Source: Salpingoeca rosetta
Lineage: Eukaryota > Protista > Choanoflagellata
Length of the DNA: 64,000 nt
Reading direction: 5' to 3'
Assembly: GCA_033442325.1 (NCBI GenBank)
Contig: JAWQFM010000004.1
Location: 1,998,954-2,062,953, forward strand
This document shows positions 24,504 to 50,256 of the stretch, piece by piece. How positions within the stretch are numbered: position 1 is the stretch's first letter; each line of letters starts with the position of its first letter. A model generated the notes under the pieces. That model was not told the DNA's origin. It saw only the letters and a program-made list of their open reading frames with translations, and did not search any database. Both the position numbers and the translations under genes were made by a program.

Positions 24504-27500
24504 TTGCAGCTTGCAATCCGATAATCCCTTCCCACTCTCAATCTGAGCTTCAACGCGCACACTGACCACCCCACATCCCTCCCCCTCCCACACTCACTCG
24601 TTTCATAGATCTGCATGCGGGAGATCAAGAGGTGCCAGCAAGAATCGAGCGGCATCAGCTATGTGCTCATCCTTGGCAACAAGTATGGCTTCCGCCCCTT
24701 TCCCGCCAAGATCCCTGAGGAGGAGTTCAACCTGCTGAAGGACGAGATGGCCAAGCAAGCCAAGCAAACTGCGTCCACTGTGACCCCAGCTGCGCTCAAC
24801 AAGGCCATGGAGTACATGGACGAGTGGTTCGTCCTGAATGAGAACGTCGTGCCGCCGACCCGCGAGCTCACGCCCGTGAAGAAGGAGCACTCTGATGCGT
24901 GGTGGTCCGACATCTTCCCTACGCTGCAGACGTGTCTGCGCCAGGCGGCAACGGGAGCGCCTGGGCTGTCTGATGAGCGACGCGCCCTGTACGTGCAGAG
25001 CGTGACGGCGGAGGAGATTGAGAACGGCCTGTTCAAGGTGGAGCCGAAAGAGGCGCGCGACAAGGCGTGCTTCGTCTTTGACCGGCGCCTGGAGGGCATC
25101 GACGTTGCATTGGACCCAGACACGGCTAAGCTGTTCATCGACATGGCTGGTGGCGAGGTGGACGAGGAGGCGCAGCAGCAGCTGGAGCGATCGCGTGCGG
25201 AGGCGGTGCCGGCTGCCCTGTCACCATCTCGCATCAAGACCATGACCATCCCATGGGGACCAGGCATCGACCTCGCTCGCACCGACCACGCAGAGTACAT
25301 GCGCACCTTTGCCGACGCCTTCTGCGACACGCTGGCGACGGACATTGAGCGTGTTGCGCGCGAGCACGCGTTTGAGAGCGATACAGTGGTGGAGGAGGCG
25401 GCGGCGCACGCCATGTTCGGCAACCTGCGGCGACGTGGGTTCGTGTCCACAGCAGCCACCCAGCAGACGGTTGATGCTGCCCTTGCACACGTGCAACAAC
25501 GCATTACCGGTGGCAAGGAGGTCGCAGCTCCGTTTGCCATCTGTGGCCCATCTGGCAGTGGCAAGACTTCACTCATGGCCCATATCGCAGGTGCGTTGTG
25601 TGTGTGCGTGCATGCGAATGTCTCTTGTTGTGCTTGCCTTCATGCATGTCCTCATTGTGGGATGCGCTCTGCTTTCCTCTGTCCCATCACATGCTCACAC
25701 ACACACACACACACAAACGCACACATACACACACACGCCATACGCTCACACACTAGGTGCCATCAAAAAAGCCCACCCAGCTGCCGTCGTGGTGTCGCGG
25801 TTCCTGGGCACGTCGCGGGAGAGTGGCACTGCCCGCACCCTGATGGCCAACGTGTACCGCCATATCCACCGCGCACTCAAAGGAAAGAAGCCAGCAGCAG
25901 CGCCAGCAGCCGACTTTGAAAAGCTGACAGAACAGTTCCAGGCCGCCCTCAAGCTTGGCACTGCTCGCAAACCGCTGGTGCTCGTGCTGGACTCGCTTGA
26001 CCAGCTCTCGGACGAGGACCAGGGCCGTAACCTGGAGTGGCTGCCGCTCGCATCACTGCCGCCAAACTGCGCCATCGTCGTCTCCAGTTTGCCGGATGTG
26101 GGCGGATGCTGGGAGGTGCTCAAGGCCTCGCTGCCAGACACCAACCAGCAGCACGTGGCCAAGATCAGCAAAGACGACGCAGACGGCATCCTGAGCACAT
26201 GGCTGGCCGATGCCAAGCGGTCCCTCATCCCTGCACAGCGCAGTGTTGTGCTGGGCGCCTACGAGTCCTGCCCAACACCGCTGTACCTCCGCATCTGCAC
26301 GCAGTTCTTTGCGCTTCGCTGGACCCACAAAGACGCAATTGCACCCGACTTCTTTCCCAAGACGGTGGAGGGCCTGATGGAGAAGGTGTTTGATGAGCTG
26401 GAGACGCGACACGGCAAGGAGACGGTGCGGGCAGCGCTCGGGTACCTCTCTGCCTCGCGCGGCGGGCTGAGCGACAACGAGATGGAGGATCTGCTGTCCT
26501 GCAACGACACCGTCCTGGACGAGATTTACGAGTGGTGGGTGCCGCCCGTCCGCCGCGTTCCCCCGCTCATCTGGGCACGCATCGTGTCTGACCTGGAGGG
26601 CGCGTTGGTGGAGCGTGGCGCTGAGGGCGGTGTCATCATCCGTGCACGGTACCACCGGCAGCACCGCGAGGCAGCAGAGCGACGCTACCTCGGCCTCAAC
26701 TCGCGCAGTGGTGCTGGAAATGACACGGGTGATGGTAGCGACGGTAACGGTGATGGTGCTGGTGACGTCGCCACGTCCTCGTCCTCGTCCACGACCGCTA
26801 CCTCCACTTCCACCACCACCACCACGGCCCTGACGGTGCAGCGGCACGGCGAGCTTGCAGACTACTTCAGCGGCAGGTGGGAGCACGGCCGCCACCTGCA
26901 CGACAAGACGGACGACGCAAGTGCTCTGCGCGACCGCAAAGTGGCCTCCATGAAGACGGTGCTGGCTGGTCGGCTCGATGACCCGCGCTCCGGTGCTGTG
27001 GTCAACGCACGCAAGGTTGCCGTGCTGCCGTTCCACCTCATGCATGCGCAGCGGTGGGAGGAGTGCGCGACAACCCTGTGCGACCTCGAGTTCATTGAGG
27101 CCAAGGCAACAGCGGGGATGGTGCGGCAGCTGGTGGCAGACTTTGAAGACCTGCAGCGCAGTGGTGGTGGTGGTCGTCGTCAAGGTGGCGCACTGGAGAG
27201 CCTGCTCAAGAAACACAGTTTCAACATCTGGACGCGGTTTGTGGCTCGCAACGCCAACATCTTCGAGCGTACACCTGGTGCAGTCATCGCACGCGCCTCG
27301 CTGTATCCAGACCAGACAGCGGTGTTCAAGGCGGCTGAAACTGTGTTGTCAGCGCCAGGTTGCCGCCTACCACGCGTGCGCCAGTTTGAAAAACCGCAAC
27401 AGTTGAGCTCGCTCGCAACCGTGTGCTCCGGGTTTTCGTTTCCGCCAAAGGGCATTGCTTTCACTCGCAATGGCAAGTGGGTGTGCGCCGGCGTGGGCAG

Positions 27501-29467
27501 CAAGCTTCGCGCGTGGGATGCCAATACTGGCAAATCAGTTCTGACACTCAGCATGCCAGGTCAACTGGAATATGTGTGCCGCGTCGTGCAGCTGCCAAAC
27601 GGCCATGTGGCGACGGCGTGTTCGTCTGGGCAGATTCACGTGTGGAACCTCTCGACTCGCGAGCTGGTGTGGACCGTGGAAGTGGCGCAGGCAGAGGAAG
27701 AGTTCCGCTCATTGTATGTACCAGGTGATGATTTGACAGTCCTCGTCATCGTTGGGCCGAAACCGCAGCCGTCTTCTTCTCAGACCGCACAGCCGACCAG
27801 CACGACCACCACTGACCCACGCCGTGTTCACCTGATGCTGTACACACCGGACCTGCGCCAGTGCGTGTGGCGACATGAGATGGACGACACTGTCTTGTCT
27901 TGGCAGCTGCGGGACAACACACTTGTGGCGGGAACCAATGACGGTCGCATTGTGTGGTGGAAGTTGGGCGGCGCGCCGACCATGGCAGCCGCTGTGCAGG
28001 CCATCATGGACCCTATTGAAGGGACGTTGGTGGAGGTGGCAAGCTACGCATTTCTCGTCAAGGAACGAGAGTTGCCATTGCGCCATTTGCCCATGAGTCT
28101 GGTCTCTGGCGGACTTGATGTTGTTGCTGCTGGACGATTCCGAATGCTGTCATACATCAAGGCAGATGGCTCACTTTCAGTGGAGCGACAATTCGAGCAT
28201 GAAATCTCGGCTATTCGTGTTGTGGCAGGCGGCGGCGCGCTGCTGGCCCTCGCTCGCGGCATGTTCGGCATCACCGTTATCAGGGCTGACACGCTGGAGG
28301 CTGTGCATCGAATTCAAGCGCCTGCTAACCGAATCATGGCAGCGACACCTTCTGGCGACCTCCTCGCTTGCTCCGACTTGCAGCAGCCGTTTGTGGCCGT
28401 TTACAGCTTGGAGCAGGTCGATGTGCATGCCAAGGCCTTGACTGATCGAGGGCATCAACAACAGTCACTGATTTCCGAGCCACATGTGGCAATGCTGGCT
28501 GCAGATGGCGCAAGTGGGGCGGGCGAGAAGGAGACTTTACCTGCATTTGCTGTTGGACGCGACGACCTCGGCTTTTACGACGCAGCGACGATGGCGCTTG
28601 TACACACTGTTGCGCTCAAGGAGCACCGGGCGAGTGCCCTGAACGTCAAAGCCGCATCATTGTTTGGTCCATGGCGCAGCCATTTATCGTCCTCGACGCC
28701 GTGCGGCGCAAGATGTACAAGGACGTCATCACATTCCGCGAGATTAAGAATACTGTGGTACCCCCGAGGATGTTGTTCTCTCCAACAAACGACACATCTG
28801 TTGTGGTGGACTGCATGAGCTCCATGCATGTTGTGGCCCTGCCGACATGCAAGTTGGTGTGTAGCCACGGGGTCTGACGACAAGACTGCATGCCTGTGGG
28901 AGCTGACGGCTGACTCTGAAGGTGTCCTCACAGCGTGCGAGATGCTGAGAGGCCGTGACGGCGGTGCTGCTGTGCACAACGACCAGCGATGATGGTGGCG
29001 ATGGTGCGGCTGTTCTTGCCACCTGTGACGGCAACACAATTGTCAAGTTGTGGAGATTGCAGCAAGAAGAGCACCCTTACGTGAGTATCAAGGTGCACAG
29101 CGGATATGCATCGTCTGTGTCGCTGGTGTGGTTGCCAAAGCAGCAGTTGCTGGCGTCTTGTGCACAAGAACAGCATCTCCTGTTGTGGAACCTGGCCGGT
29201 GAGCTTGTGCGAGCAACCAACCTCAAGCCTGCGTGGGCATTTCTGCATCCGAGCTTGAAGTATGTTGTCGCTGAAGCTTATGGTGGCTTGCAGTTTCTCC
29301 ACGCAAGCACGCTTGCACCTGTGTTTCGCGCATACGGGCATGACTTTGGTCTGGAAATCAATACGCGGAACAAACGTGTGCGAATGACGCCCGACGGGCG
29401 CTTCTTTGTTTCTTGGGCCATGGACGATGCCATCCTCGTGCATGACTTCTCGCATCTGACGTTGTGA
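23856..29467 (+). CDS. NACHT/STAND NTPase + WD40 protein (NWD1/NWD2-like, DUF4062-type N-terminus); 3' WD40 region frameshifted
   Basis: MGCHQSK myristoylation-type start; IRLFLSSTFTDTEVERNAL..MRWG; Walker A GPSGSGKT; Walker B LVLVLDSLDQL; GLSDNEMEDLLS; WD repeats. Exons 23856-24350, 24610-25590 and 25758 onward. Frame shifts occur at about 28660, 28860 and 28955. Confidence 0.85.
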
Positions 29468-31768: not shown

Positions 31769-32937
31769 AAAGACAGTGCGTATGCAATAGACACTCCACT
31801 CACTCTACTGACCGCTTCCACCCACCACTGCCTTCGAATCCGATCTGACCACCTTTTCCACCACCCTGCTGCTATCAGGAAGCATCTGCCACAAGAACTA
31901 CCCTTCTCCCCGACTCCCATGCAAGCACCTGCTCAACGCCTCAACCCCCCCCCCCCATGCGCACACAATGTAAGCCGGCTGCAGTCACGTCCCCGTTCAT
32001 CACTTTTATTCCTCCTCAATCACACGCACGCGCACACTCATGCACTTGCACACTGACACGCACACATGTGACATTGCTGCCACCACCTGCAGTCATACAG
32101 CGTGGGCGGCCACAGGAGAGCAGGCTGGGAATGAGCGTGGCTGAAGTGGGCGAGGAAGAGGACAAGGAGCTCGTGCACGAAGCAGAGGACATGGCAGAGA
32201 GGGTGTGCATCCACAGCAATCACAACAGCGCCACCACAATGAACGCGGCACCACTGCTGCAGCTACTGCTTGGGGCGGCATCAGGGCCATTCCCACCAGC
32301 ACTGCCTGCGCCTGTACATGGGCCAGCAGCGCCACCGTCCTTGTCGCATGCCATGATGCCGACGTTGTCAACGACACCAATCATCACAAGCACATTGCCG
32401 CCGCTGCAGCGGGATTGCAGTGCAGCTGCCAACACATGTCGACCTCATCCGCAGCAACGGCAACGACAGCAACAACAGCTGTGATGGCAGCAGAAGCAGC
32501 GGCAGCAGTAGGTCTTGTCCACCTTCCTTTCCTAACACGGTGCCGCCGTTACCTCATGTCTGCGGCGACGGCTACAGCGACAGCGCCACGGCCGTTCAGG
32601 GGCACCCTTCTGTCGCCTACTATCTTGATGCCATCACCATCGTCTTCCTAATCGTCGTCTTCTTGACCCCATCACGGTCATCAACAACAACGACTGAAGC
32701 AGCAGCGGCGTCACCAGCGACAAACACTGTTGCACCACCAGTATCGCTCTCAGCGTATGTAACGCTTGCAGACAGCTGGGGACGGATGAGATTCACACGC
32801 TCGGCTGTCGGTAAGCTATGCACATACCAGTATTGTGGTGTTTGGGGTGTGTTCAGCGCATGCTCGATGGCACAGTGATGTGTTCACTCACCCCTGTGTT
32901 TGTGTGCGTGTGTGTGTGTGTGTGCGTGTGGATGTGT

Positions 32938-33055
32938 GTATGTATGTATGTATGTATTGGTATGTATGTATGTATGTATGTATGTATGTGTGTATGTATG
33001 TATGTATGTATGTATGTATGTATGTATGTATGTATGTATGTATGTGTGTATGTAT
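32938..33055. repeat. (TGTA)n microsatellite
   Basis: Visible tetranucleotide array. Confidence 0.9.
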
Positions 33056-33405
33056 GTGTGGGTGTGTGCGTGCACGTCGTAGGCTGTGGCATCGAGGATT
33101 GGGCGGGCTTTTGAATCCAAGCGCGCTTCGGGGGCAGCGACGACGATGCTCGCAACCACTGACGGTTTGAAGTAGCAGACAGAAGGCGCTTCACTGCCCA
33201 GGTGTGTGTATGCACGTGTGTATGTGTATGCATGGGTGTGCGTGCATGTAGGTAGTTGTGTACATGAGTGTGTGTGTGTCTGTGTGTCTGTCTGTGTCTG
33301 TGTGTCTGTCTGTCTGTCTGTGTGTCTGTCTGTGTCTGTGTGTCTGTCTGTGTGTCTGTGCGTCTCTCTCTCTCTCTCTCTGTGAATCGCCACGCATGTG
33401 TACGC

Positions 33406-33871
33406 ATGCAGTTCGTCTCCTTCACTTCCCTCATTCCCTCACGTCCTCGTCCGCGACGCACGCGCCTGCACTTGCATACAGCTTCAGCGCATTCCTTTCC
33501 TGCGCCATACGACGGCACGGTGTATGTGGCAGACTCATCAACGCAGTCTTCCACCGAGGACAGACAACGGTGTCTGGGCCACCAGCTGCGCAAGCTGTAC
33601 AACATCGAGGCAGACCACGTTGTGCACCTCAGGGATGTGCCACAGCAGCAAGACGGCGTGTCGTGTGGCCTGTTTGCGCTGGCTTACGCCACACTGCCGG
33701 CTGCTGGCCTGCATCCGCTCGACTTGAACTGCGTCAGCATGACGGCACACCAGCTGCGCACGTGGTACTTTCAGTGCATGGCTGATCAGGAGGCAGATGG
33801 TGCGGAGGCGCTGCTCATGAAGTTGCTACAAGGGGCACAACCTAATGACAAAAACAACGACGACAACGACG

Positions 33872-33950
<79 letters not shown>

Positions 33951-34264
33951 AGACGACGACGACAACAGCCTTGAGTCGCGACTCCACCAGCGACGCTGCC
34001 TTTTTGTCTTGCAGAGGCAGCGGGCCCTCCACTTGCAGCCGACAAGAGAAGAGGATCGAATGGCCTTCTCTGCCACAGTGGCCGAGGTGGTTGTGGTGCA
34101 TGACAGGAGCGATGGTGTGGAGGAGGAAAAGGACGTGGTGGTGATTGAGGGTGCTGCGTTCGAAGAGGGTTTCGATGGCGGAGATGTGATCGACTTGTAC
34201 GGAGACAGTTGTGATGACATGGGCGAGCCGCAGCAGCCACACTGGCCACAACAACAACTTCTGC

Positions 34265-34347
<83 letters not shown>

Positions 34348-34729
34348 CTACTACAGCAGCCACACTTGCAACAGCAGTTGCAGTTGCTGCCACAAGTGCA
34401 CCATACCGTCGCTCAGCATGGGCTGCTGAACAATCAGGTCCCGCATTATACCCAGCAACAACAGGCACAGCAACAGCACAACTGCCAGCAGATCCAGCAA
34501 CTGCAGCACTCGGCATCGTGGCAGATTGCGCTGCACCATGCACGAGGCGCCAAGAACAGACGCAGTCGGAGACGACGACGCCAACAGCGCAGACGCAACG
34601 CGCAGAGCACATCAACGTCGTCCGCCTCCATGCCCTGGAATGCGCAGTGTGGTCCCACCACTCCGGTCGCCGTGATGGAGAATTGGCGCATCCCGTCACG
34701 CGGTTCTCGCAGCACGTGGAAGATACACT

Positions 34730-34730
<1 letters not shown>
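33406..34730 (+). pseudogene. Ulp1/C48-like cysteine protease fragment followed by poly-N/poly-Q tracts; possibly a transposon-borne remnant
   Basis: VYVADS...VPQQQDGVSCGLFALAYA matches the Ulp1 Q-x(5)-C-G catalytic motif. No clean upstream His exon was found. Confidence 0.5.
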
Positions 34731-34774
<44 letters not shown>

Positions 34775-35342
34775 GTGCGTGCGTGCGTGCGTGTGTGCGT
34801 GCATGTGTGTGCGTGCATGTGTTTGTTTGTTTGTGTGTTTGCTTGTGTGCGCGTGTGATTGCGTGCACTTGATCCTATGGTCATGTTGTGTTCCAGAGGG
34901 TCACACGACGTGTGTCTTTGTCTGCTTCCACAGCCACTACATCCAGGAGAAACCAGCTTCCGCGTGTTGGAGTACACGCCACCACAGCCGTCACACGTGC
35001 ACGCTGGGGCCAAACAAGCGTAATGAAACAAATTGACAATGGTGCGCGATCAGTTGGCCTGACGCACCGCGTGGTACATTCACATGACGTCAAGCAACTG
35101 CAACGATCTCGTTCACCCTTCCACGCATTGATATGGCAATTATCAGTCATTTTCAATCGTATCAAGCCCACAAATCTCAATGTCGAAGTTGTATGTGAGG
35201 CAGACGTGCAACACCAGCTGGGGAACAGATGGACAGTGCAAGGATTGATGGAAACTCAGTGACAACGAACAAGGTAAGGCGAGGGCGGGAGCCATTGAGT
35301 TCGTGTGCAAGAAGACAACAACAGAAAGGGCTTGACGAGAAA

Positions 35343-36116
35343 TCACTGAACGGGCTGTATGGCGCTTTCTTGAGCAAGTGTCATGTCCTTGTCTTCCTCC
35401 TGAATCAAATTGACTGGCACAAAGTCAGGCAAGCCCGTGGCTTGCGTGTTGGTGAGGAGGAGGGAGGCATCCGCCCTTTCAAAGGCACTTCCCTCCTGTT
35501 CAGCAAAATGCGTAAACCAGGTGGAAAGCTCAATGTGTTGGCACTGGTGTGCTACGGTTACCAGCGTGCAATCGTTGGCCCGAAGACGGTGGGTTGGGCC
35601 TTGTGACAGCCCAATGACGTGCACATTCGCAGGGAGTTCTGCTCCGAGATCAGAGCGAAACTTTTGAGCGAACGTTCCCCCAAAACATTGTGCAAACACG
35701 ACAATTATTTTGAAGTCATCCTTAATCAGGGGCTGCAGATGTTTCTTCAGTCCAGAAAAGCTGTTCCTGCCGTTCCAGAGGCTGTTGGGGCTCCAAAGAA
35801 GGTATTGAGGAGCCATACCCCACAACTTGGACAATGGATATCCGCGAAAGCTGTCCGTGGAAAGACCATGGCAGCATGCCGCAATGACAATCGGCTTCGA
35901 AGAGTCAAACTTCTTGTCGCGGAAGTCCTTTTGCCACCGACTCACTGTCCTAGCCAGCTCTGCCTCCAGCTCTGGCAGGCTGCCGCCGCGCCAGAAACCG
36001 TGGTTTGGCTCGAAGCAATCCTTCATGGAGACATGCAGTGGGATGGTGTAGCGGTCGACCACCTCCTGCGGTTCAGGACTGAACTGGAAGTACAGCGGCA
36101 ACTGTGGGCTTGACAT
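35343..36116 (-). CDS. Intronless 257-aa protein, candidate caspase-hemoglobinase-fold cysteine protease
   Basis: PIVIAACCHG (strand + His-Gly) and KIIVVFAQCFGG (strand + Cys) lie about 60 aa apart, followed by strand VHVIGLS. The ORF is clean and non-repetitive. Confidence 0.55.
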   Translation of the reverse strand: MSSPQLPLYFQFSPEPQEVVDRYTIPLHVSMKDCFEPNHGFWRGGSLPELEAELARTVSRWQKDFRDKKFDSSKPIVIAACCHGLSTDSFRGYPLSKLWGMAPQYLLWSPNSLWNGRNSFSGLKKHLQPLIKDDFKIIVVFAQCFGGTFAQKFRSDLGAELPANVHVIGLSQGPTHRLRANDCTLVTVAHQCQHIELSTWFTHFAEQEGSAFERADASLLLTNTQATGLPDFVPVNLIQEEDKDMTLAQESAIQPVQ

Positions 36117-36563
36117 CGTTCTTGTCTGCTTCTGCTTCCTGCTTTGTGAGACGCGAAGTGATGGTGAAAATGGTGATGTGACATGATGGAGACATGTTTC
36201 GTTTGAAGGATTGTTGTGCTGACCCGATGCGCTCTGCGTGAGTCGTACGCAAAACCGGTGGAACAAGCAAACAGTGCCCACTTTCCCGACCGTACAGTCG
36301 TCCAGTCGACAAATCTATCTCGGATTCTGAAACCCCCAAACACCGAACAATCACGAAATACACCCATTTCCCGAATTGTTGACTGCAATTCCAGAAATCC
36401 ACACACAGTTGAGTTGCATTTCCTGTTGGGGAAGGGGGCACACACCCTCGCGATTTTTTTTCGGGTGCTGCTTGCAGCTCAAAAATATCCGTGTACATTC
36501 ATTCGCCAGTGTCAAAAACAAACCATTTTCGTACGCAAACACTCGCGTTCACCACAGCGAGCC

Positions 36564-37268
36564 ATGGACTTGACTGAGAAGCTCCAGAAGAGAAAACTGC
36601 AGCGCCACCATGGGGACGCTGAGGCGAGGGAAATCCAAGCAGCCCAATCCCAACCCCCCGATGAAGAAGAGTACTGGAAAACACATGGTATGCAAGCCGA
36701 CCAAGGCCCACCAGCTGTTTCGTTCAAACTTTCCAAAAAAGCAAAAGTGAACAGCGAAGGAAAGAAATCACGTTGGACTCGCTATACGTATGCGATTGAC
36801 AAGCAGCCACACGGGGATGTTTCTCTGAATTACGCATCGTCAGGACATGTGCCGGACAGCGTGGAAGAGCTTCTCGATCACATCCACGCGTCTGCCACAA
36901 CGAACTGCCTGCTCACCTGTTTTCAGACGCAATCTCAGCTCATCCTAGAGGCCTTCCAGAGCATCGTGAAGGCAGATAAAGCACAATGGCAAGATCTGGT
37001 GGATCAGCACAACAAGGCAACCCTTGATGGTGGCGACGCGGATGACGCCATCTGTTGGCCATTCGTGGAATCCGCGAAGGATTACCACTGGGCATATCGT
37101 CGCGGCCGATTCTGGATCGAGCAAGCAGGATCTGAGGGACCCCTGCTCATTTGGGAAGCAGACAATGAAGAAGTTGCACAGGACCCAGAACCTTTGTTGA
37201 AGGACGTGGCGTCTCGTGGGGATGGTTCCCGGTATCCAACCCACTTCAAGTTCAAAATCAAGCGTTGA
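36564..37268 (+). CDS. Intronless 234-aa orphan protein, divergent from the caspase-like ORF
   Basis: GCCATGG start context and a complex globular-looking sequence. No motif recognised. Confidence 0.55.
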   Translation: MDLTEKLQKRKLQRHHGDAEAREIQAAQSQPPDEEEYWKTHGMQADQGPPAVSFKLSKKAKVNSEGKKSRWTRYTYAIDKQPHGDVSLNYASSGHVPDSVEELLDHIHASATTNCLLTCFQTQSQLILEAFQSIVKADKAQWQDLVDQHNKATLDGGDADDAICWPFVESAKDYHWAYRRGRFWIEQAGSEGPLLIWEADNEEVAQDPEPLLKDVASRGDGSRYPTHFKFKIKR

Positions 37269-38570
37269 CTGCGTTGAAATCGTCCACTGACGCCACGTTG
37301 CGTTTGGCTTTACATGCGACCACCTCACAGGCCCGGCTCTAAACGTCCTTCACGCCGACTCTGAAACACACATTCTGGCCATGCACTGCACTTGTGCTCT
37401 TTGTTTGGTTGCCACTTGAAAAGGAAGGTTCCCACTTACCTTTCTCGATCTTGTTCGTTCCGTTGAGTTGTGAATCATCAATAGACCTGACGACATGTCA
37501 CATACTCCTCGTCATGACACCGATCAGTTGCTTGTCAGGAGCAACTGAAGGAAAGCAATCACAGTTAACTCTTCGTAGCATGTAGCTCCGAAGTTGGAAC
37601 TTAGGATTGTATTGATTTGTTTGAAACATTCATTGATGAACCGGAATGAGAAAGACATGCTGATGACAAGCGAAATGAGACATGACATGTGAGAGAGAGT
37701 GCGAATTGCCATGGAGATAGGTGTGTGTTTTCAGACCGTCGGCAACTACCATGTCGTGTGAGTTGGTGACACCGTTGTTAAGTTGTTCCGAACACCACCA
37801 TAGCTGTAGTGGTTCTACTCAAGCACTCTCTACTTCCGAACCACCACTACTCTACATACACACACATACACAACACCAACCACCCTTGCTCTTGCACTTG
37901 CCGACTGTCTGTGTTCACTTACTATTGCTGTATCGAGTCCACTCCAATGCACATCTCCTACACTTGGAAGACAACAGAGCACAACGTTGATGACAGCCAT
38001 GAGTTTCTGTTGTTTGATTGTTTCTTCACCTTTTTTTGGCTTTTGTTTCACCTCTCACATCACTTGTTGATTCACACGAAGACTTCAACATTGGTGTTGT
38101 GTGACCTTACCTGCGTGTTTGACAGTTTGTACTTCTGCCTGTCTCTCAAGAATACAACCTCCAGAGGCACATCGAGTCAAGTCAACTGCCCTTCCAACAC
38201 CTGCACAATCGACCCCACCTCTCGCTTGCGGTGAATTCGCAGAGCCTGATTCGCTAGATATCCAGGTGTCTCTTTGCTTTCATCTTGCCGTTTGCTTCTT
38301 GTTGCGCATATTGATTGTGGCAACTATGGTCCCGCTGAGGCACATCGAATACAGTTTCAACATGTAATGGAGGTCAACGAACAATGGGCAACATGCGGCA
38401 AAGAGGCAAGGCATAGAATCGGGGAAACTACAGGAATGTATGCAAAACAACGTGCGCGATGGTGCGAAAGGCACAATAACGAACGAATTCGAATGATCTT
38501 CTTCAACCCCCTTTCCACCACACACCAAAACAACCAACACCCAGCACACACACACACGCACACCACACGC

Positions 38571-40578
38571 TTAAGGTTTCTGAGGAATCATTGTCACGTA
38601 ACCGTCCTCTGACACAATGACAATGAGAACTTGCTGCTTGTTGCGCTTCGCTTGATCATAGTACCTCCACCCACTGTTGAATCTTGCACCGCGACTGCTG
38701 TCACCATTGCGGGACACGGGCCCTGCAGTCATGATTATGCAATGCAAGGAATGAGTGATTTATGGATCTGGAAGGAAGTAGAAGGCGCTGTGCTTATCAG
38801 CGAATTCATGTCACACCAAGGTCCAAGCAGAATGAAACTCACATCAAGCTACATCTCACCGTCAAGGATGACTCCAATGGCGTGACACTTCCCTTTCCGG
38901 TCTAGAAGTACCGCCCCGTCAATACTGGTGACAGCAAGGACCAGCCCTTCATCCAGTAACCTTGAATTCAGCAAACAAGGACGTGAGCTGCTATCAAACG
39001 GCAACCAAATTGTAAGTATTCGAAGCAAACTCATTGCCACCTCCCTCCCTACCTTGGCTGTTTGAGTTTGGTCGACTGGGAGGATAAGCGGTTGGCTTCT
39101 GCTTCAGCGGCGTTGCTGATGACAACCATGGTTCCATGTTTTTGTCTCAGTGCGTGTCCAATAACTGTCCAGATGGCGTGTGAATGGGCGCGATTCCCGA
39201 AAGTGTGTTGGATAGCAGCATTGACATCAGCTTGTCCCAGGCGCTCCTTGGGTAGAGAAACGCCTCCTGAAGCCGAGACAGTGTAGAATGTTGTAAACTC
39301 CTCAGGGCCTCTGCCAGAACTGATCTTGAGCTCCCAACACAGTGGTTTTGTAAACATTACCACAACTTTGTCTCGCTTAATCTCAGCCAAGCGGCAGAGC
39401 CCAACAACTTTGCGAGACGTGTCTAGGATAAGAGCGTGGCCATCGGGAGAAGTCATCTCAAGAAGTTTGCGGGTCCCTTTGATGTCGTCGATGTTGACGG
39501 GGTTTCGAAAAGAGAGAGCGACATGGGCTGGGTCGATGGCGGCAGCAGGGACAATCGCCCCTGTCAAACCGTCGCCCTCATAGGCAGTAGCACTGAGGAT
39601 GACAAGCTCTCTGAATACATTCTTGAGCATCTCGCCTTCCGCAAGCTTGGCCTGGCATGCTCGACGGCGAACTGCAGTGTTATTGCCATTGAAATGTGTC
39701 ATCGGTTGCTGGAGCTCGAGCTTAAGCTGCTCCTTGTTCTTCACGGTGCGATGCAATACAACTACAGTGAGGAATGCCGTGTGTTGGCAACGCACATCTC
39801 GGAAGGCGAAAAAGCATCGAAAGCGTCCATTTTTCCATTTCAGGTTGTTGAGAATGGTCATAAGATGCTCGCCGGGGTCCTCCTCACCATCCTGAGATAG
39901 TTGCAGGTCTTGCATTTCTGGCGCGTCCACCTCGTCGTCTTCACAGGCATCATTGTCTTTGCCGACGCACTGGCTACCACCTGAGTTCTTTCTTGCTTCT
40001 GTCAGTCGCAGGTCGTATCGTTCTCCTTTCGGCTTCTTCGGTGGGAATTGACCCTCGTCGTGCTCAACATCATCAAAATCTTCCTCGTCGTCATCATTAG
40101 GTGCTGGACTGTGCTGACTATTGTCGGTATCATTCTCAGCTTCACCACTCTCTTGGCTGGAAGATGTGGATTTTAGGGTTTTGGCATCATCGAGCACATC
40201 TTGAGATGAAGGCTGATCAACGTCATCTGCGTCCTCGTCGCTGGGTGCCGGCACGTAATCTTCTCCTTGATCTTGAGACTCGTTGCTTTCTTGGCTGCCA
40301 CGCGTCTCCACTTCCTCTGGAAAACGTTGTTTGTGCACGAAATGTGCCATGCTCTGCACCTTTTGGGTGAAGTCTCCTGGCAGAACTTCGAGCGAGCCGC
40401 AGTGGAACTGTCCATTGTTTCGCTCAAAATCGAAGTTGGGGACAGTCAAGGTTTCTTCGGTGATCGTGAGTGAAATCACAGCGCATATCTCCTTGTCTCT
40501 CAGTTCGATTCCATGGTCATGAAGCAACTTGCGAACTAGGTCATGAGCTTCTTGACGAATGCTTTTCACGCTCGTCAT
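38571..40578 (-). CDS. Bacterial-type diadenylate cyclase (DisA_N/DAC domain with N-terminal sensor-like domains), 592 aa; join(40578-39053, 38960-38860, 38722-38571)
   Basis: Splicing two GT-AG introns (39052-38961 phase 2; 38859-38723 phase 1) gives QKHGTMVVIS...AVTSIDGAVLLD..GKCHAIGVILDG...SRGARFNS...VIVSEDGYVTMIPQKP*. The HG, DGA, RGAR and SEDG motifs are all present. The upstream part has AYEG...FRNPVNIDDIKGTRKLLEM. Confidence 0.88.
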
Positions 40579-41256
40579 GTTGCGGCGTTTCTTGAGCTGA
40601 GCAGGGTGGGATTTGTGGTTCTGACACGGGGGTTGTGCTGAATCGCGTTGAAGTGTGTGGTGTGTGGGTGTGTGTGTGAACTAGTGAACTGGTGAACTGG
40701 TGAATGAGTGTGCGTGTGTGTGTGTGCGTGTGTGTGTTTGCTTGTTTGTGTTCGTGTGTGTGAAAATATGTCCGTGCGGACAGTCATTTTGGGGTGAGGC
40801 AGCCACCCTCTTTTGGACACTCATTGATTGACAGAGCTTACATTACCGGTCACCGGATTCTCTGCAAAGCAAATCATCGCAGGGCAATTGCAAGCGTGGA
40901 AGGAAAGTGTTTGCGCAGAAGGAAACAAAGCCAGCTCAAACTGGGAATCCTTTCCTTCCCTGGTGTATTGTTTGTTTTTCTGACTCTTGTTTTTCTTGTG
41001 TGTGTGTTATGCTTTTTCTTCCACTGCCTTCCTTCCCTTCTCCTTCCTTTGGTGTCACATCAACATGCCGCGACGCTCTCCTTCTCTCCCATCTGCTGCT
41101 GCTGCTGCTGTTCGCCCTCATCATCGCTGGGCGCTGTGCTCGCTGTTGCCACCACTGTTGCTGTTGTTGTTGTTGGCAGGCTTGTCGGTGACTCATGTCC
41201 ATGGCAGCATGGCTGCTTGAAGGATGCTGTGAGTGTGAGAGAGAGTGTGTGTGAGT

Positions 41257-41288
<32 letters not shown>

Positions 41289-41724
41289 CTGTGTCGAGCT
41301 TCTTGCTCTTGTTGCCCTCGCGTCTTGCTTCTTTGTCACAACGTGCCTTCTGCTCTGTTCACGGTTGCACTTGCAGCTGCCACCGACTCACACCACCACA
41401 CCACCACATCTCCATCTCGCCACGTCCGTTCCACAACACCAAGGACCGCACGCTGTCCCCCTCCGTGGACACAACATTGAGGCACCTGGAAACAACGCTC
41501 AAAGAGCATCGCGTGCCGTTCGCCACTGGACAGTTGCGTCCACGAACCACTTCTTCCACCACGATTGACCTGTCATCGATCCAACGCATGATGAACGCCT
41601 TTGGGTGCAACAGCAACGGTGTCGAGGAGAGAAATGGGGTAACTCAACACCCATCAACGGCAGCCCATCTCAACCAGACACGACATGCACTGCCCTCCTC
41701 AAGAGCGCACAACTGCACCCCTCA

Positions 41725-42066
41725 TGCACACGCGTGCGACGCGCTGATAGCGACGAACAGCGTGCTGGCCAGTGTACCCTGCAAAGCATCACTGATGGCT
41801 CGTGCGCTGGAGCCTTGGAGCTGACACCCATGGTGCACTGTTCCTCTCGGTTTCTGGCCACGAAGCACGTGGGTGAAGAATTGACGCTGGTGAGCACATG
41901 ACGCGACAGAAGCGTTGAGACAACGACTGTGTGGGATCTGAAGCTGCGATTGCTGCGCGATGTTCTGATGTTGTGAGTTGCCTGAGTGGCATCGCCTTTA
42001 TTCACAGCCTCGACCAGATGCACCGGTGAGTGGAATGATAGTGTGTATGTGTGTGCGTGTGTGTGT

Positions 42067-42097
<31 letters not shown>

Positions 42098-42611
42098 CCT
42101 GCAGCCGCGTGTTTGTTGCTCACCCCTTCATCTCCACCCACCCATCCACCATCCACTTTACAGGGGATCTGAAGAGCGGCAACGTGCTGGTGTCATCATC
42201 GCTTCGCGCCAAGATTACGGACTTTGGGTCCATTTGCCAGTGCTTCACGCGTGACAGAAACCAGCAGCAGCGCACAAGTCTCTCCTCAACTGCAAGCGAT
42301 GACCCTCAGTACAGCCAGCAAGCTGGACTGCAAACGATGACGAGCACGACGCTGACGGCTGGCGTGGGGACATCGCTGTACATGGCGCCAGAGGCACTGA
42401 CGGGCGACAAGTACAGCTTTGAAACCGACATCTTCAGCTTTGGCGTGCTGATGTGGGAGGTGGCGACGCAGCGACCACCTGATCTGATCGAGCAGGAGAA
42501 GGGCAGCGGGTATCGTGGCCCAATCCTCGCCACCATCAGCAACCTGATGAAGGATGGGAAGCGGCTGCGATTTGATGATGGTGAAGAAGATGGTGAGTTG
42601 TGTGTGTGTGC

Positions 42612-42702
<91 letters not shown>

Positions 42703-42916
42703 CGTGTTGTGTGCATGTGTGCTCGTTTAGATTGCGTGACCACGCGTCCATCTCTCTCTCTCTCTCTGTCTCTATCTCACACAAACACACACACACACAT
42801 GCACACGCCTTTCAGCCATCCCCGAGTGGTTCCAGTCGCTGACGTACAAGTGCATGGCGCAGGACCCGCGTGAGCGTCCATCATTTGGAGACCTCAAGGA
42901 CCACCACTTTGCTTGA
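41725..42916 (+). pseudogene. Protein kinase (TK/TKL-like) with intact C-lobe and decayed N-lobe
   Basis: HR|DLKSGNVLV, KITDFG, GTSLYMAPE, DIFSFGVLMWEV and CMAQDPRERPSF. Upstream sequence has stops and frameshifts; no Gly-loop or VAVK found. Confidence 0.75.
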
Positions 42917-48561: not shown

Positions 48562-50256
48562 AATGCACACGCAAGCGCATGCACGCACCCCAGAGGCATG
48601 GGAAGCTGCTGCTGTGCTGGGGTGGGGTGATGGCTTCCGAAGAGTGTCGGCAACAGCATCTTGGTGGTTGTCGGAGGGCGCCGATTCCCCGTTCTCAGGT
48701 GTGCTCGAAACTGAAGCGGAGGTCGTGCATGCCTCGTCAACCAGCCTGCTGCTCTTCACGCTGCTGTGGCAGTGAGACGATTTCAACGGAGTACCCGTCC
48801 GTCGCGTGCAATGTCTGCCAGCTCGCCTGACGACACCTCTGCAAGATGTTCGACAGCAACCGTTTTGTGTTCGATCATGGGTGTGGTCTTGATCACCGTT
48901 GGCCCGACACACTGCTGCTGTCGCATACGATGGCCGCCTTGCCCTGGGCACACAATCCACATGCCACGGTGGACTTTGCCTGAGGAGACGCCATGGCTGT
49001 TGTTGTTGTGGTGGTGGTGGTGGAGTCGAGTGGCCACATGCAGCAGCAGCAGCAGGTTCACGTTGTTCTTCTGCTCCTCCATCCACCGTCTGGCAGCTGG
49101 CTCACACTCAACATCACGCATGCTTGCACCTGTCCTGGTGAAGGAGGAGCACGCCGTGTTAGTGGAGAGGAGGCGTTGCGCATGCATGCTGGTGCCAACC
49201 AGACGGAGGGAGGAAGGGCACACACTCCTCATGATACCGGCAGTGGTGGCTGGGGAGTGTCTGGGACAGAGAGGGACCGCTGCATCACACACGTACATCA
49301 GGTGCACCTGTGTGCGTCCTTGGCTGTGGGGACACTGCGTTCACAGGGGAAAGAGGCAGGGTGGACAAGATGGTGGTGGGAGGAGGAGGAGAGCGTCACG
49401 ATGTCAGACATGATGTCAGAAGCGAGAGGAGGAAAGGTGCACCAGCACAAGCTGGGGGTGATGGAAGAGAGGAAGACGGACATGAGCACGTGTCATATGA
49501 AGCAATGTGTGGAGTATGTGTGCGTATGTGTTTACGTGTGTTGCGCAGATAAGGCTGAGCAATGCAATGCAACGAAATGGAGTGATCTCACACTCACCTT
49601 TGTGTGAGCAGTGCATTCTTCAGTCACGATGCCTGTCTCCTTGACATGAGGTCAATTCACGCCCTCCTTTTGCACTGCGTGATGAAGCTGTGGTGGGGGT
49701 GCAGCACAGCAAGACACCGACATCGCGTGCCGTGTGTGCTCTGTCCTTGTTGGTGCAGTGATGAGCTGATGAAGGCAAGGAAGGATGTTGGATGGAAGGC
49801 TGTCTCAAGGGATGGATGCGTTTCAACGTGCTGCCTTCCACAACACTTTTCTATCTATCTAAGCGGCGCCTGCTCTCACACACATTCGCCCATGCACACC
49901 GCTGCCCTCTGTTTTACCCCTTCCCCATCTCTGAGCGCTGGGAACAGTGTAAGATTTCAGCGAGTTTTCCAATAAAAAGACAACAAACACAACACACCAC
50001 AACAGCGAACTTGCTTGTTGTGTGTGGCTGGAAATCCAATGCACGATTCCCAACAATCGTCCACAACCACAACCAGCCAAAACGCCACAAACAATCCACC
50101 AATCCTGTCTTCTCTTCTCTTCTTCTCTTGGTGCTGCGCCTGCCCTGCAAACAGACACACGCGAACGAGGAAGGAGGGAGGCACACTTCTCTTCTCCTTC
50201 TCTCCTTCTTCTCCTCTCCTCTTCTCTCCTTGTCTTCTCTCTTCTTCTCTGCTTGT

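What the first reader, a model, noticed from the sequence alone, without database searches (positions are those of the whole stretch)
35020..40900. Compositionally distinct three-gene island: protease-like + orphan + DAC
Seen: by eye this 6 kb is less GC-rich, has more A/T-ending codons and lacks the long (CA)n arrays found elsewhere. Its ORFs are intact although the flanks are pseudogenes. Inference: a cassette inserted as a unit (transposon cargo, endogenous virus or HGT), analogous to a CBASS-like synthase-effector operon maintained in a eukaryote.
Basis: partly seen in the sequence, partly recalled or inferred. Interest (0 to 1): 0.8.

Follow-up and report, generated by a model that had tools for sequence, protein, structure and literature searches.

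The report
Bacterial-type diadenylate cyclase gene in choanoflagellate
This stretch of the Salpingoeca rosetta genome is not an inserted three-gene cassette, but one of its genes is an intact, intron-bearing diadenylate cyclase of a bacterial family partly linked to anti-phage defence, which I did not find described in any eukaryote.

Summary
The window is Salpingoeca rosetta scaffold GL832960.1.

**Observation: mostly real but modest.**
- 35020-40900 has the lowest GC of all 5.9-kb windows (0.502 against 0.549).
- It holds the longest stretch without (CA)n arrays (6.5 kb, P about 0.02).
- It has the largest tetranucleotide distance.
- The flanks are annotated multi-exon genes, not pseudogenes.

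**Cassette reading: not supported.**
- There are no terminal repeats, target-site duplications or mobile or viral genes.
- The three genes lie on alternating strands and have different origins.

**The three genes:**
- **DAC gene (PTSG_02954, 38571-39915/40578, minus strand).** It has two GT-AG introns inside the catalytic domain. It belongs to the bacterial CdaG/DS-2C cyclase family (hhalign E 3e-54, 34-40% identity). It keeps 54 of 60 highly conserved columns, including all active-site motifs. It lacks the DACNG domain and the C-terminal helix bundle. No other eukaryotic relative appeared.
- **"Protease-like" gene.** It belongs to a small, undescribed family with a caspase-like fold and invariant His-Gly and Gln-Cys-x-Gly. 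Every member I could place is eukaryotic. It is never next to a DAC elsewhere.
- **Third gene.** It remains an orphan.

**Best reading:** an old bacterium-to-choanoflagellate transfer of a cyclic-di-AMP synthase, sitting by chance beside unrelated genes.

The parts
38571..40578 (-). Diadenylate cyclase gene (PTSG_02954). The annotated CDS is 38571-39915. The exon-1 reading frame stays open upstream to an ATG at 40578.
   Evidence: ORF list. 100% match of the public protein P0001 to three colinear pieces. Annotation. NCBIfam DS2_3_antiphage E 2e-66. hhalign E 3e-54.
39053..39915 (-). DAC gene, annotated exon 1. It carries the DACNH domain at about 39325-39618 and the start of the DAC domain from about 39150.
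   Evidence: Pfam DACNH E 1e-11. tblastn of P0001 and of 10 bacterial relatives.
39916..40578 (-). Unannotated in-frame 221-codon upstream extension of exon 1. It has a short globular-looking start and a long acidic low-complexity stretch. It matches no family.
   Evidence: ORF 39049-40578. Pfam finds nothing. No DACNG match by hhalign. GC1 0.65, GC2 0.36. Whether it is coding is inferred from ORF length only.
38961..39052 (-). DAC gene intron 1 (92 nt, GT-AG), inside the DAC domain.
   Evidence: Sequence read. Public model. Bacterial proteins align colinearly across it.
38860..38960 (-). DAC gene exon 2. It carries the Asp-Gly-Ala active-site motif.
38723..38859 (-). DAC gene intron 2 (137 nt, GT-AG), inside the DAC domain.
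38571..38722 (-). DAC gene exon 3. It carries the Arg-Gly-Ala-Arg-Phe-Asn-Ser and Ser-Glu-Asp-Gly motifs and the stop codon. The protein ends right after the DAC domain.
35343..36116 (-). Single-exon gene for a 257-aa caspase-like ('protease-like') protein (P0005).
   Evidence: 22 distant relatives. Invariant His83-Gly84 and Gln143-Cys144-x-Gly146. Model pLDDT 80. Caspase-type fold matches, all weak.
36564..37268 (+). Orphan gene. It is an open 234-codon frame. The annotated product is 182 aa, which fits removal of an in-frame GT-AG intron at 36688-36843.
   Evidence: No family or relative found. Only a non-significant histone H2B-like hit, E 0.03.
36117..36563 (.). 447-bp spacer between the divergently oriented protease-like and orphan genes. 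A shared promoter region is possible; this is inferred.
   Evidence: Gene coordinates. GC 0.488.
37269..38570 (.). 1.3-kb noncoding spacer between the convergent 3' ends of the orphan and DAC genes. It is the lowest-GC part of the region.
   Evidence: GC 0.471. No remnant of DACNG, of the C-terminal bundle or of other bacterial genes by tblastn. No Rfam match.
34766..41262 (.). Longest stretch of the window without a perfect (CA)8+ or (GT)8+ array.
41065..42916 (+). Right-flank neighbour: a multi-exon protein kinase gene, divergent from the DAC gene. It is not part of the feature and not a pseudogene by annotation.
31957..35023 (+). Left-flank neighbour: a multi-exon gene for a 657-aa product. 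It is not part of the feature and not a pseudogene by annotation.

Best explanation
The 6-kb region is ordinary Salpingoeca rosetta chromosome. It holds three short, intron-poor, unrelated genes, and its lower GC and lack of microsatellites are a local feature, not the scar of an insertion.

The one remarkable gene is the diadenylate cyclase. An ancestor of S. rosetta took up a bacterial CdaG/DS-2C-type cyclase gene. The gene then became a normal eukaryotic gene. It gained two spliceosomal introns. It lost, or diverged beyond recognition in, the N-terminal DACNG domain and the C-terminal helix bundle. It probably gained a new N-terminal region with an acidic insert.

**Shown:**
- family membership;
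- retention of the DACNH domain and of every active-site motif of the family;
- the intron structure;
- the chromosomal setting.

**Inferred:**
- The protein still forms the head-to-head DAC dimer and condenses two ATP into 3'3'-c-di-AMP, as bacterial DS-2C proteins do in vitro.
- Its output is controlled through the DACNH and N-terminal part.
- The product acts on a receptor encoded elsewhere in the genome.

The caspase-like neighbour is a member of a small family whose placeable members are all eukaryotic, and it probably has its own, unrelated role. Its adjacency to the cyclase is most likely coincidence.
For: **Identity of the window**
- 100% match to PTSG_02954 on a 2.08-Mb scaffold.

**Family of the cyclase**
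- Pfam DACNH E 1e-11.
- NCBIfam DS2_3_antiphage E 2e-66 over profile positions 221-489 of 576.
- hhalign against 27 bacterial members: probability 100, E 3e-54, profile columns 241-506 of 607.
- 1598 word-search hits. The top 120 are bacterial or unnamed metagenomic proteins at 34-40% identity, and the only eukaryotic entry is S. rosetta itself.

**Conservation of the cyclase**
- 54 of 60 columns that are at least 90% conserved are kept.
- His-Gly-Thr, Ile-Asp-Gly-Ala, Arg-Gly-Ala-Arg-x-Asn-Ser and Ser-Glu-Asp-Gly are all kept.
- The one variable motif residue (Phe) is shared with 28 of 120 relatives.

**Eukaryotic gene structure**
- Two GT-AG introns interrupt the DAC domain.
- Ten bacterial proteins align colinearly across them.

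**No cassette**
- No end repeats.
- No mobile or viral genes.
- Neighbours' relatives are absent from 86 bacterial or viral cyclase loci.
- DAC is absent from three eukaryotic loci carrying the protease-like family.

**Origin of the protease-like family**
- Named members come from Amoeboaphelidium and Phalansterium, and one more is an unnamed EukProt entry.

**Activity of bacterial DS-2C**
- 3'3'-c-di-AMP synthesis in vitro (preprint 10.64898/2026.08.10.743927).
Against: - The region really is the compositional outlier of this window, and I have no positive explanation for that.
- The donor lineage is unresolved. S. rosetta is a long branch: its minimum distance is 1.08 substitutions per site, against a family median of 0.98. 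Its neighbour-joining partner is an unnamed 2.4-kb contig protein.
- My own Pfam scan did not bring up the DAC model for the spliced protein at E <= 0.1. A precomputed hit is on record.
- The NCBIfam score (224 bits) is far below the equivalog cut-off (630).
- No expression data, enzymatic data or receptor are in hand.
- Only the top 120 of 1598 relatives were visible, so another eukaryotic member further down the list cannot be excluded.
- Adjacency of a cyclase and a caspase-like protein recalls real bacterial signal-effector pairs. Coincidence is argued from absence of linkage elsewhere, not shown.
Confidence: 0.72

Rival explanations
1. Eukaryote-assembled signalling module. The cyclase and the caspase-like protein were not transferred together, but they came to lie side by side and work together. 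In this reading the cyclase makes a cyclic dinucleotide on some trigger, and the protease, with or without the orphan, executes the response. That would parallel bacterial cyclase-effector pairs and the adjacent cGLR and STING genes of other choanoflagellates.
For: - The genes lie within 2.5 kb of each other.
- The caspase-like fold has an invariant His/Cys pair.
- Part of the cyclase family is defence-linked in bacteria.
- Choanoflagellates keep cGLR and STING genes adjacent (preprint 10.1101/2025.09.04.674280).
- An NLR-like NACHT-WD40 gene lies about 6 kb away.
Against: - The 257-aa protein has no recognisable nucleotide-sensor domain. It is only the catalytic-type core plus a disordered tail.
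- The linkage is not seen in any other genome examined.
- The cyclase is divergent from the kinase gene, not from the protease gene. The orphan gene lies between the cyclase and protease genes, so no shared promoter is apparent.
Confidence: 0.12
2. One reading: one cassette inserted as a unit (transposon cargo, endogenous virus or a single multi-gene horizontal transfer). Its foreign composition would still be visible.
For: - Lowest GC, largest tetranucleotide distance and longest microsatellite-free stretch of the window.
- One gene is of bacterial ancestry.
- Cyclase relatives occur on two IMG/VR viral contigs.
- Giant-virus caspase-domain proteins are among the weak fold matches of the neighbour.
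Against: - No terminal repeats or duplications.
- No mobility or virion genes.
- No viral-contig relatives of the two neighbours.
- Alternating strands.
- The neighbours have different or unknown origins.
- Introns and about 40% identity imply long residence, which should have erased donor composition.
- The GC3 of the protease-like gene is ordinary.
- The fold matches to viral proteins have TM 0.3-0.43 and about 10% identity, which is fold-level only.
Confidence: 0.06
3. Decaying relic. The cyclase gene is a transferred fragment that lost two of its four domains. It is either no longer an enzyme (a pseudo-enzyme) or unexpressed.
For: - DACNG and the C-terminal helix bundle are missing.
- The score is below the NCBIfam cut-off.
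- Six highly conserved columns are changed.
- GC3 is low.
- No expression evidence was available to me.
Against: - All three exons are open, and the splice sites are canonical.
- 54 of 60 conserved columns and every active-site motif are retained at only about 40% overall identity, which indicates purifying selection.
- Bacterial or metagenomic members with similarly reduced architectures exist: P0070, P0013 and P0016.
Confidence: 0.09
4. Bacterial contamination or a misassembly. The cyclase would belong to a food bacterium in the culture.
For: - S. rosetta is grown with Bacteroidota prey.
- An Algoriphagus species carries a family member (L036, 36% identity).
Against: - The gene lies inside a 2.08-Mb scaffold between eukaryotic multi-exon genes.
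- It is interrupted by two GT-AG introns.
- It is only 34-40% identical to any bacterial protein.
Confidence: 0.01

Closest known systems
Bacterial CdaG / DS-2C diadenylate cyclases (DACNG-DACNH-DAC-helix bundle; NCBIfam NF053872 'DS2_3_antiphage')
   Same: - DACNH plus DAC domains align end to end (hhalign E 3e-54).
- All family-specific active-site motifs are kept.
- Family members make 3'3'-c-di-AMP in vitro.
   Different: - It is eukaryotic and nuclear, with two spliceosomal introns.
- It has no detectable DACNG domain and no C-terminal helix bundle.
- It has a different N-terminal region with an acidic insert.
- There is no CD-NTase or 2TM-beta effector nearby.
- Identity is 34-40%.
- The score is below the equivalog cut-off.
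CBASS and the related Panoptes/Panoptoo (PanDA) cyclase-effector operons
   Same: A nucleotide cyclase lies next to a candidate executioner-type protein. Part of the cyclase family is found beside CBASS operons.
   Different: - It is not an operon.
- No CD-NTase or minimal DAC is present.
- The neighbour has no sensor domain.
- The pairing is not conserved anywhere else that I looked.
Adjacent cGLR-STING gene pairs of the choanoflagellates Monosiga brevicollis and Salpingoeca macrocollata
   Same: Both are bacterial-defence-derived cyclic-dinucleotide signalling genes resident in a choanoflagellate nucleus.
   Different: - The enzyme fold is different (DAC, not cGAS-like).
- No receptor has been identified.
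- S. rosetta does not occur in that paper's main text (term search).
Clan CD cysteine peptidases (caspases, metacaspases, legumain, the Raptor caspase-like domain)
   Same: - For the 257-aa neighbour, the alpha/beta core has a His after one strand and a Cys after the next, both invariant in the family.
- The best fold matches are the Raptor caspase-like domain, caspase-11, -4 and -8, legumain, a C11 peptidase and giant-virus caspase-domain proteins.
   Different: - No Pfam or PDB sequence match. Only one relative reaches Peptidase_C14 at E 0.007.
- TM-scores are only 0.3-0.43.
- SGNH-esterase and other alpha/beta folds appear among the matches.
- Activity is unknown.

Membership tests
CdaG / DS-2C diadenylate cyclase family | DAC (DisA_N) catalytic domain with the family's Asp-Gly-Ala and Arg-containing motifs | tested here: met
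   - hhalign covers the whole DAC domain, and so does NCBIfam.
- The motif columns are identical to 116-120 of 120 relatives. The exception is one Phe, shared with 28 of 120.
- Caveat: my Pfam scan did not list PF02457 at E <= 0.1, although a precomputed hit exists.
CdaG / DS-2C diadenylate cyclase family | DACNH domain directly upstream of DAC | tested here: met
   Pfam PF21750: E 1e-11, 45 bits, cut-off 27.
CdaG / DS-2C diadenylate cyclase family | N-terminal DACNG domain | tested here: not met
   - No Pfam hit in the 509-aa exon-1 ORF or its first 221 residues.
- hhalign aligns nothing before ORF residue 318.
- No remnant in the DNA.
CdaG / DS-2C diadenylate cyclase family | C-terminal helix bundle after the DAC domain | tested here: not met
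   - The protein ends 2 residues after the last aligned DAC column.
- No downstream remnant by tblastn.
CdaG / DS-2C diadenylate cyclase family | Score above the NCBIfam equivalog cut-off (630 bits) | tested here: not met
   The S. rosetta protein scores 224 bits. Its Bacillus relative P0003 also falls short, at 597 bits.
CdaG / DS-2C diadenylate cyclase family | Synthesis of 3'3'-c-di-AMP | not testable with these tools
   Known only for bacterial members.
CBASS-like cyclase-effector system | Cyclase adjacent to an effector that carries a nucleotide-sensor domain | tested here: not met
   - No sensor or effector family in either neighbour (Pfam, NCBIfam, PADLOC, PHROGs).
- No such Pfam hit on any annotated gene within 10 kb.
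CBASS-like cyclase-effector system | The gene pairing recurs in other genomes | tested here: not met
   - 86 bacterial or viral loci with the cyclase: no relative of either neighbour.
- Three eukaryotic genomes with the protease-like family: no DAC or orphan nearby.
Mobile element / endogenous virus / transposon cargo | Terminal repeats or target-site duplications at the ends | tested here: not met
   Only microsatellite-derived matches.
Mobile element / endogenous virus / transposon cargo | Transposase, integrase, polymerase or capsid genes | tested here: not met
   - No family hits.
- No relatives of the two neighbours on viral contigs.
Mobile element / endogenous virus / transposon cargo | Further copies in the genome, or presence/absence between strains | not testable with these tools
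   No tool searches the rest of the S. rosetta genome or other isolates.
Clan CD caspase-like cysteine peptidases (257-aa neighbour) | Caspase-haemoglobinase fold | tested here: inconclusive
   - The model is good (pLDDT 80, core above 90).
- Caspase-type proteins dominate the named top matches in two libraries.
- But all PDB matches have E above 1e-3 and TM 0.25-0.39.
- The viral library gives E 3e-4 to 1e-3 and TM 0.30-0.43.
Clan CD caspase-like cysteine peptidases (257-aa neighbour) | Conserved catalytic His and Cys following consecutive core strands | tested here: met
   - His83-Gly84 and Gln143-Cys144-x-Gly146 are invariant in 17 sequences.
- They follow strands 76-80 and 137-141 of the model.
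Clan CD caspase-like cysteine peptidases (257-aa neighbour) | Match to a curated peptidase family model | tested here: not met
   - No Pfam or NCBIfam hit.
- One relative of 17 reaches Peptidase_C14 at E 0.007, below the cut-off.
- The profile search of the PDB was empty.

The most novel reading that the evidence does not exclude
Salpingoeca rosetta, a close unicellular relative of animals, makes its own cyclic di-AMP (or a related dinucleotide) with a domesticated bacterial CdaG/DS-2C-type cyclase and uses it as an endogenous signal, possibly in defence against bacteria or viruses. That would be a eukaryotic diadenylate-cyclase pathway parallel to cGAS/cGLR-STING. In its boldest form, the adjacent caspase-like protein is the downstream executioner.
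Probability: 0.3. Interest if true: 0.8.

Novelty: new member of a known kind. Interest (0 to 1): 0.55.

Why it matters
To my knowledge, cyclic di-AMP is treated as a bacterial and archaeal messenger that eukaryotes only sense. None of the papers my searches listed or that I opened describes a eukaryotic diadenylate cyclase. Three of my four searches aimed at this returned nothing or nothing relevant. The fourth matched 30 papers, of which I saw only 12.

This gene is an intact, intron-bearing cyclase with a conserved active site, in the sister group of animals. It belongs to a family that two 2026 preprints tie to anti-phage defence. It would add a second, independent case of a bacterial dinucleotide cyclase taken into the choanoflagellate nucleus, beside cGLR-STING. 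It also makes testable whether early relatives of animals produce c-di-AMP themselves.

The negative result matters too. The apparent "island" is not a cassette. A low-GC, microsatellite-free patch in this genome should not be read as an insertion without end structures or recurrence.

Tried and rejected
1. **Cassette ends.** The repeat search of 33.5-42.5 kb gave only microsatellite matches.
2. **Viral origin.**
   - The two neighbours have no relatives in IMG/VR.
   - PHROGs and PADLOC were empty for all three genes.
   - The cyclase family does occur on two viral contigs, but these are phage-type contigs of low GC.
3. **Bacterial partner genes.**
   - tblastn of both neighbours and of the cyclase N-terminus against 5, then 86, cyclase loci found nothing.
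   - A profile of the protease-like family against their six-frame ORFs also found nothing.
   - A recurrent weak orphan hit in Hymenobacter loci turned out to be a RidA/L-PSP housekeeping gene: 41 residues, database E 0.2-0.9. I rejected it as chance.
4. **A conserved bacterial partner of about 420 aa next to the cyclase in two Bacillales loci.** The two proteins are unrelated, and NCBIfam was empty.
5. **Cryptic DACNG in the N-terminus.** hhalign and Pfam were negative.
6. **Lost exons.** tblastn found no remnant of DACNG or of the C-terminal bundle in the DNA.
7. **Donor lineage.** A neighbour-joining analysis of 120 relatives gave no named sister. The partner, in 70 of 100 bootstraps, is an unnamed 2.4-kb contig protein, and long-branch attraction is possible.
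8. **Orphan gene.** Pfam, NCBIfam, PADLOC, PHROGs, PDB sequences, viral contigs and metagenome contigs gave nothing significant. The H2B-like hit at E 0.03 was not accepted.
9. **Single-sequence structure model of the protease-like protein.** It was too poor to use (pLDDT 46) and was replaced by the alignment-based model.
10. **An alpha/beta-hydrolase reading of the protease-like protein.** I considered it because esterase folds appear among the weak matches. I ranked it below the caspase-like reading because caspase-type proteins dominate both lists and one relative touches Peptidase_C14.
11. **Literature.** The Galperin 2023 paper that defines CdaG is not held.

Full report
**Where the window comes from.** The 509-codon ORF at 39049-40578 (minus strand) matched a public protein at 100% identity: the hypothetical protein PTSG_02954 of Salpingoeca rosetta, listed in UniRef as a DAC domain-containing protein. 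An exact look-up placed that protein on the 2.08-Mb scaffold GL832960.1 of assembly GCA_000188695.1. The window is therefore nuclear DNA of a choanoflagellate. Nothing in it looks human or like a virus of animals.

**The observation.**
- The region 35020-40900 has GC 0.502. That is the lowest of all 5.9-kb windows, against 0.549 for the whole window. Masking microsatellites does not change this.
- Against eight non-overlapping outside windows (mean 0.556, sd 0.024), z = -2.25.
- Tandem Repeats Finder reports no array between 34857 and 40676.
- The window holds 77 perfect (CA)8+ or (GT)8+ arrays. The longest gap between them is 34765-41263 (6.5 kb; the next is 3.8 kb). With random placement, such a gap has P about 0.02.
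- The tetranucleotide distance is the largest of 117 windows.
- Third-position GC is 0.50-0.55 in the cyclase gene, 0.56 in the orphan and 0.62 in the protease-like gene. Other long ORFs give 0.51-0.73. Noncoding DNA inside the region is 0.47-0.49.

The compositional observation is therefore real but modest. 2-kb patches with equally low GC occur at three other places in the window. I could not compare with the rest of the genome.

The statement that the flanks are pseudogenes is not borne out. The public annotation has intact multi-exon genes on both sides: a 657-aa product at 31957-35023 and a protein kinase at 41065-42916 (the kinase domain is also seen). The cyclase gene itself is split.

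**The cyclase gene.**
- The public 371-aa model maps to three colinear pieces.
- Reading the DNA gives:
  - exon 1 ending at 39053;
  - a 92-nt GT-AG intron (38961-39052);
  - exon 2 (38860-38960);
  - a 137-nt GT-AG intron (38723-38859);
  - exon 3 running to the stop at 38571.
- Ten bacterial relatives align colinearly across the same three pieces and nowhere else in the region. Homology therefore supports the splice model.
- Pfam finds the DACNH domain (E 1e-11).
- NCBIfam finds NF053872, 'DS2_3_antiphage'. The score is E 3e-28 for exon 1 alone and E 2e-66 for the spliced public protein, over profile positions 221-489 of 576.
- A profile of 27 bacterial members aligns to it with probability 100 and E 3e-54, over profile columns 241-506 of 607. 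That span is DACNH plus DAC.
- The first 317 residues of the long ORF match nothing, neither DACNG nor any Pfam family.
- The protein stops two residues after the DAC domain, where bacterial members continue for about 90 residues.
- The exon-1 frame is open for 221 codons upstream of the annotated start, to an ATG at 40578. It includes a long acidic stretch. At about 50% GC, a chance run of that length has a probability of about 2e-5 (my calculation). I take that part as probably coding, but this is inference.

**What the family is.** Two preprints of August 2026 describe it.
- One calls the roughly 550-aa proteins DS-2C. It describes them as DACNG-DACNH-DAC proteins found in a CBASS variant called DS-2, and shows that three purified members make 3'3'-c-di-AMP (10.64898/2026.08.10.743927).
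- The other calls the family CdaG, after Galperin 2023. It notes a C-terminal helix bundle and finds only a subset next to CD-NTases and 2TM-beta effectors (10.64898/2026.08.10.743972).
- My own look at the closest bacterial relatives agrees that the context is mixed:
  - a prophage or defence-like island in Salimicrobium;
  - an unannotated neighbourhood in Bacillus;
  - plainly housekeeping surroundings in Pedobacter and Hymenobacter.

The S. rosetta protein is thus a member of the wider CdaG family. It cannot be called an orthologue of the anti-phage subset. Its score of 224 bits is far below the equivalog cut-off of 630, and even its Bacillus relative falls short at 597 bits.

**Is it still an enzyme?** I aligned the protein with 120 relatives.
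- It keeps 54 of the 60 columns that are at least 90% conserved.
- It keeps every residue of the His-Gly-Thr, Ile-Asp-Gly-Ala, Gly-Val-Ile-Leu-Asp-Gly, Arg-Gly-Ala-Arg-x-Asn-Ser and Ser-Glu-Asp-Gly blocks.
- The one variable position is Phe, which 28 of 120 relatives share.

At about 40% overall identity, this pattern indicates purifying selection on the active site. Activity itself is inferred.

**Origin.**
- The word search restricted to DACNH+DAC gave 1598 hits. The best 120 are bacterial or unnamed metagenomic proteins at 34-40% identity. The named ones are Bacillales, Bacteroidota such as Pedobacter, Hymenobacter and Siphonobacter, and Sorangium. The only entry from a eukaryotic source is S. 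rosetta itself.
- The scan of one genome per prokaryotic species gave 146 confirmed relatives, again mainly Bacteroidota.
- A neighbour-joining analysis shows S. rosetta as a long branch inside the family. Its minimum distance is 1.08 substitutions per site, against a family median of 0.98. It has no named sister.
- Its partner, in 70 of 100 bootstraps, is P0070, from an AT-rich 2.4-kb contig. P0070 also lacks a DACNG hit and ends right after the DAC domain.
- The donor is therefore unresolved.
- Contamination is excluded by the introns, the scaffold context and the low identity.

**The protease-like neighbour (35343-36116, minus strand, 257 aa).**
- The word search found only the protein itself.
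- The exhaustive HMMER search found 22 distant relatives (E 1e-13 to 6e-4).
- Those that carry a name come from Amoeboaphelidium occidentale and Phalansterium solitarium. One more comes from EukProt without an organism name. The rest are short transcriptome-like contigs or long contigs with eukaryote-type gene content.
- Seventeen sequences share invariant His83-Gly84, Gln143-Cys144-x-Gly146, Ser171 and Thr175.
- With that alignment the AlphaFold model reaches pLDDT 80, with the core above 90. The His and the Cys each follow a core strand.
- Foldseek gives weak but consistent caspase-type matches:
  - In the PDB: the Raptor caspase-like domain, caspase-11, -4 and -8, legumain and a C11 peptidase. 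All have E above 1e-3 and TM 0.25-0.39.
  - In the viral library: giant-virus caspase-domain proteins, with E 3e-4 to 1e-3 and TM 0.30-0.43.
- One relative touches Pfam Peptidase_C14 at E 0.007.
- I read this as an undescribed caspase-like family. 'Protease-like' is fair, and activity is unknown.
- None of the three genomic contexts examined has a DAC or a relative of the orphan nearby.

**The orphan (36564-37268, plus strand).**
- It is an open 234-codon frame. The annotation gives 182 residues, which fits an in-frame GT-AG intron at 36688-36843.
- No family, viral, metagenomic or structural-sequence relative was found.
- A histone H2B-like hit at E 0.03 is not significant.

**Is it a unit?**
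- The strands alternate.
- The protease-like and orphan genes are divergent, 447 bp apart.
- The orphan and cyclase genes are convergent, 1.3 kb apart.
- The cyclase gene is divergent from the kinase gene.
- There are no end repeats, no mobility genes, no tRNA and no Rfam match.
- In 86 bacterial or viral loci carrying the cyclase family (1.5 Mb), neither neighbour has a relative.

The first half is not met, because the composition does deviate from the window.

**Verdict.** The cassette is not supported. The cyclase is a genuine, apparently functional, horizontally acquired CdaG-type diadenylate cyclase in a close relative of animals. It is annotated in public databases only by domain. I did not find it discussed in the searchable literature. 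Three of my four searches aimed at it returned nothing or nothing relevant. The fourth matched 30 papers, of which I saw only 12. The choanoflagellate cGLR-STING preprint, found by a separate search, does not contain 'rosetta', 'diadenylate' or 'DAC' in its main text.

Noticed in passing
window about 24600-29467 (+): A large NLR-like gene (annotated product 1652 aa) with DUF4062, NACHT/AAA_16, an NWD1-type winged helix, an APAF1-type helical domain and WD40 repeats. It ends about 6 kb left of the region. It is an innate-immunity-type STAND NTPase near the cyclase.
   Followed up: partly
window 39916-40578 (-): The cyclase's first exon stays open for 221 codons upstream of the annotated start. 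This stretch includes a long acidic low-complexity run. The public gene model may be truncated at its 5' end.
   Followed up: partly
window 36564-37268 (+): The orphan protein gives a weak histone H2B-like hit (E 0.03, residues 44-132). The annotated in-frame intron (36688-36843) would remove most of that stretch. The hit is not significant.
   Followed up: partly
L009/L010, L011/L012, L013: Relatives of the caspase-like protein occur as duplicated copies on single eukaryotic contigs. In L011/L012 the copy lies about 2 kb from ORFs with Ty3-type reverse transcriptase and integrase domains. I did nothing with that element.
   Followed up: no
L014 (protein P0070): An unnamed protein on a 2.4-kb contig of 30% GC is the neighbour-joining partner of the S. 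rosetta cyclase (70 of 100 bootstraps). Like the S. rosetta protein, it has no DACNG hit and ends right after the DAC domain.
   Followed up: partly
L036; L007, L008: Algoriphagus iocasae carries a family member (36% identity). To my knowledge this is the genus of a bacterium cultured with S. rosetta. Two IMG/VR viral contigs also carry family members (38% and 30% identity).
   Followed up: no
L023 and other Hymenobacter loci: In Hymenobacter the CdaG-type cyclase is a conserved chromosomal gene. It lies next to TonB, RidA/L-PSP and RNA-ligase genes, not in a CBASS operon.
   Followed up: partly
window 49792-51489 (+): A 565-codon uninterrupted ORF with DUF5074 (E 2e-9) and DUF6923 repeats.
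   Followed up: no
whole window: The window is very rich in (CA)n/(GT)n arrays: 77 perfect arrays of 8 or more units in 64 kb, about 7% of all bases. Many appear to lie inside introns of annotated genes.
   Followed up: partly
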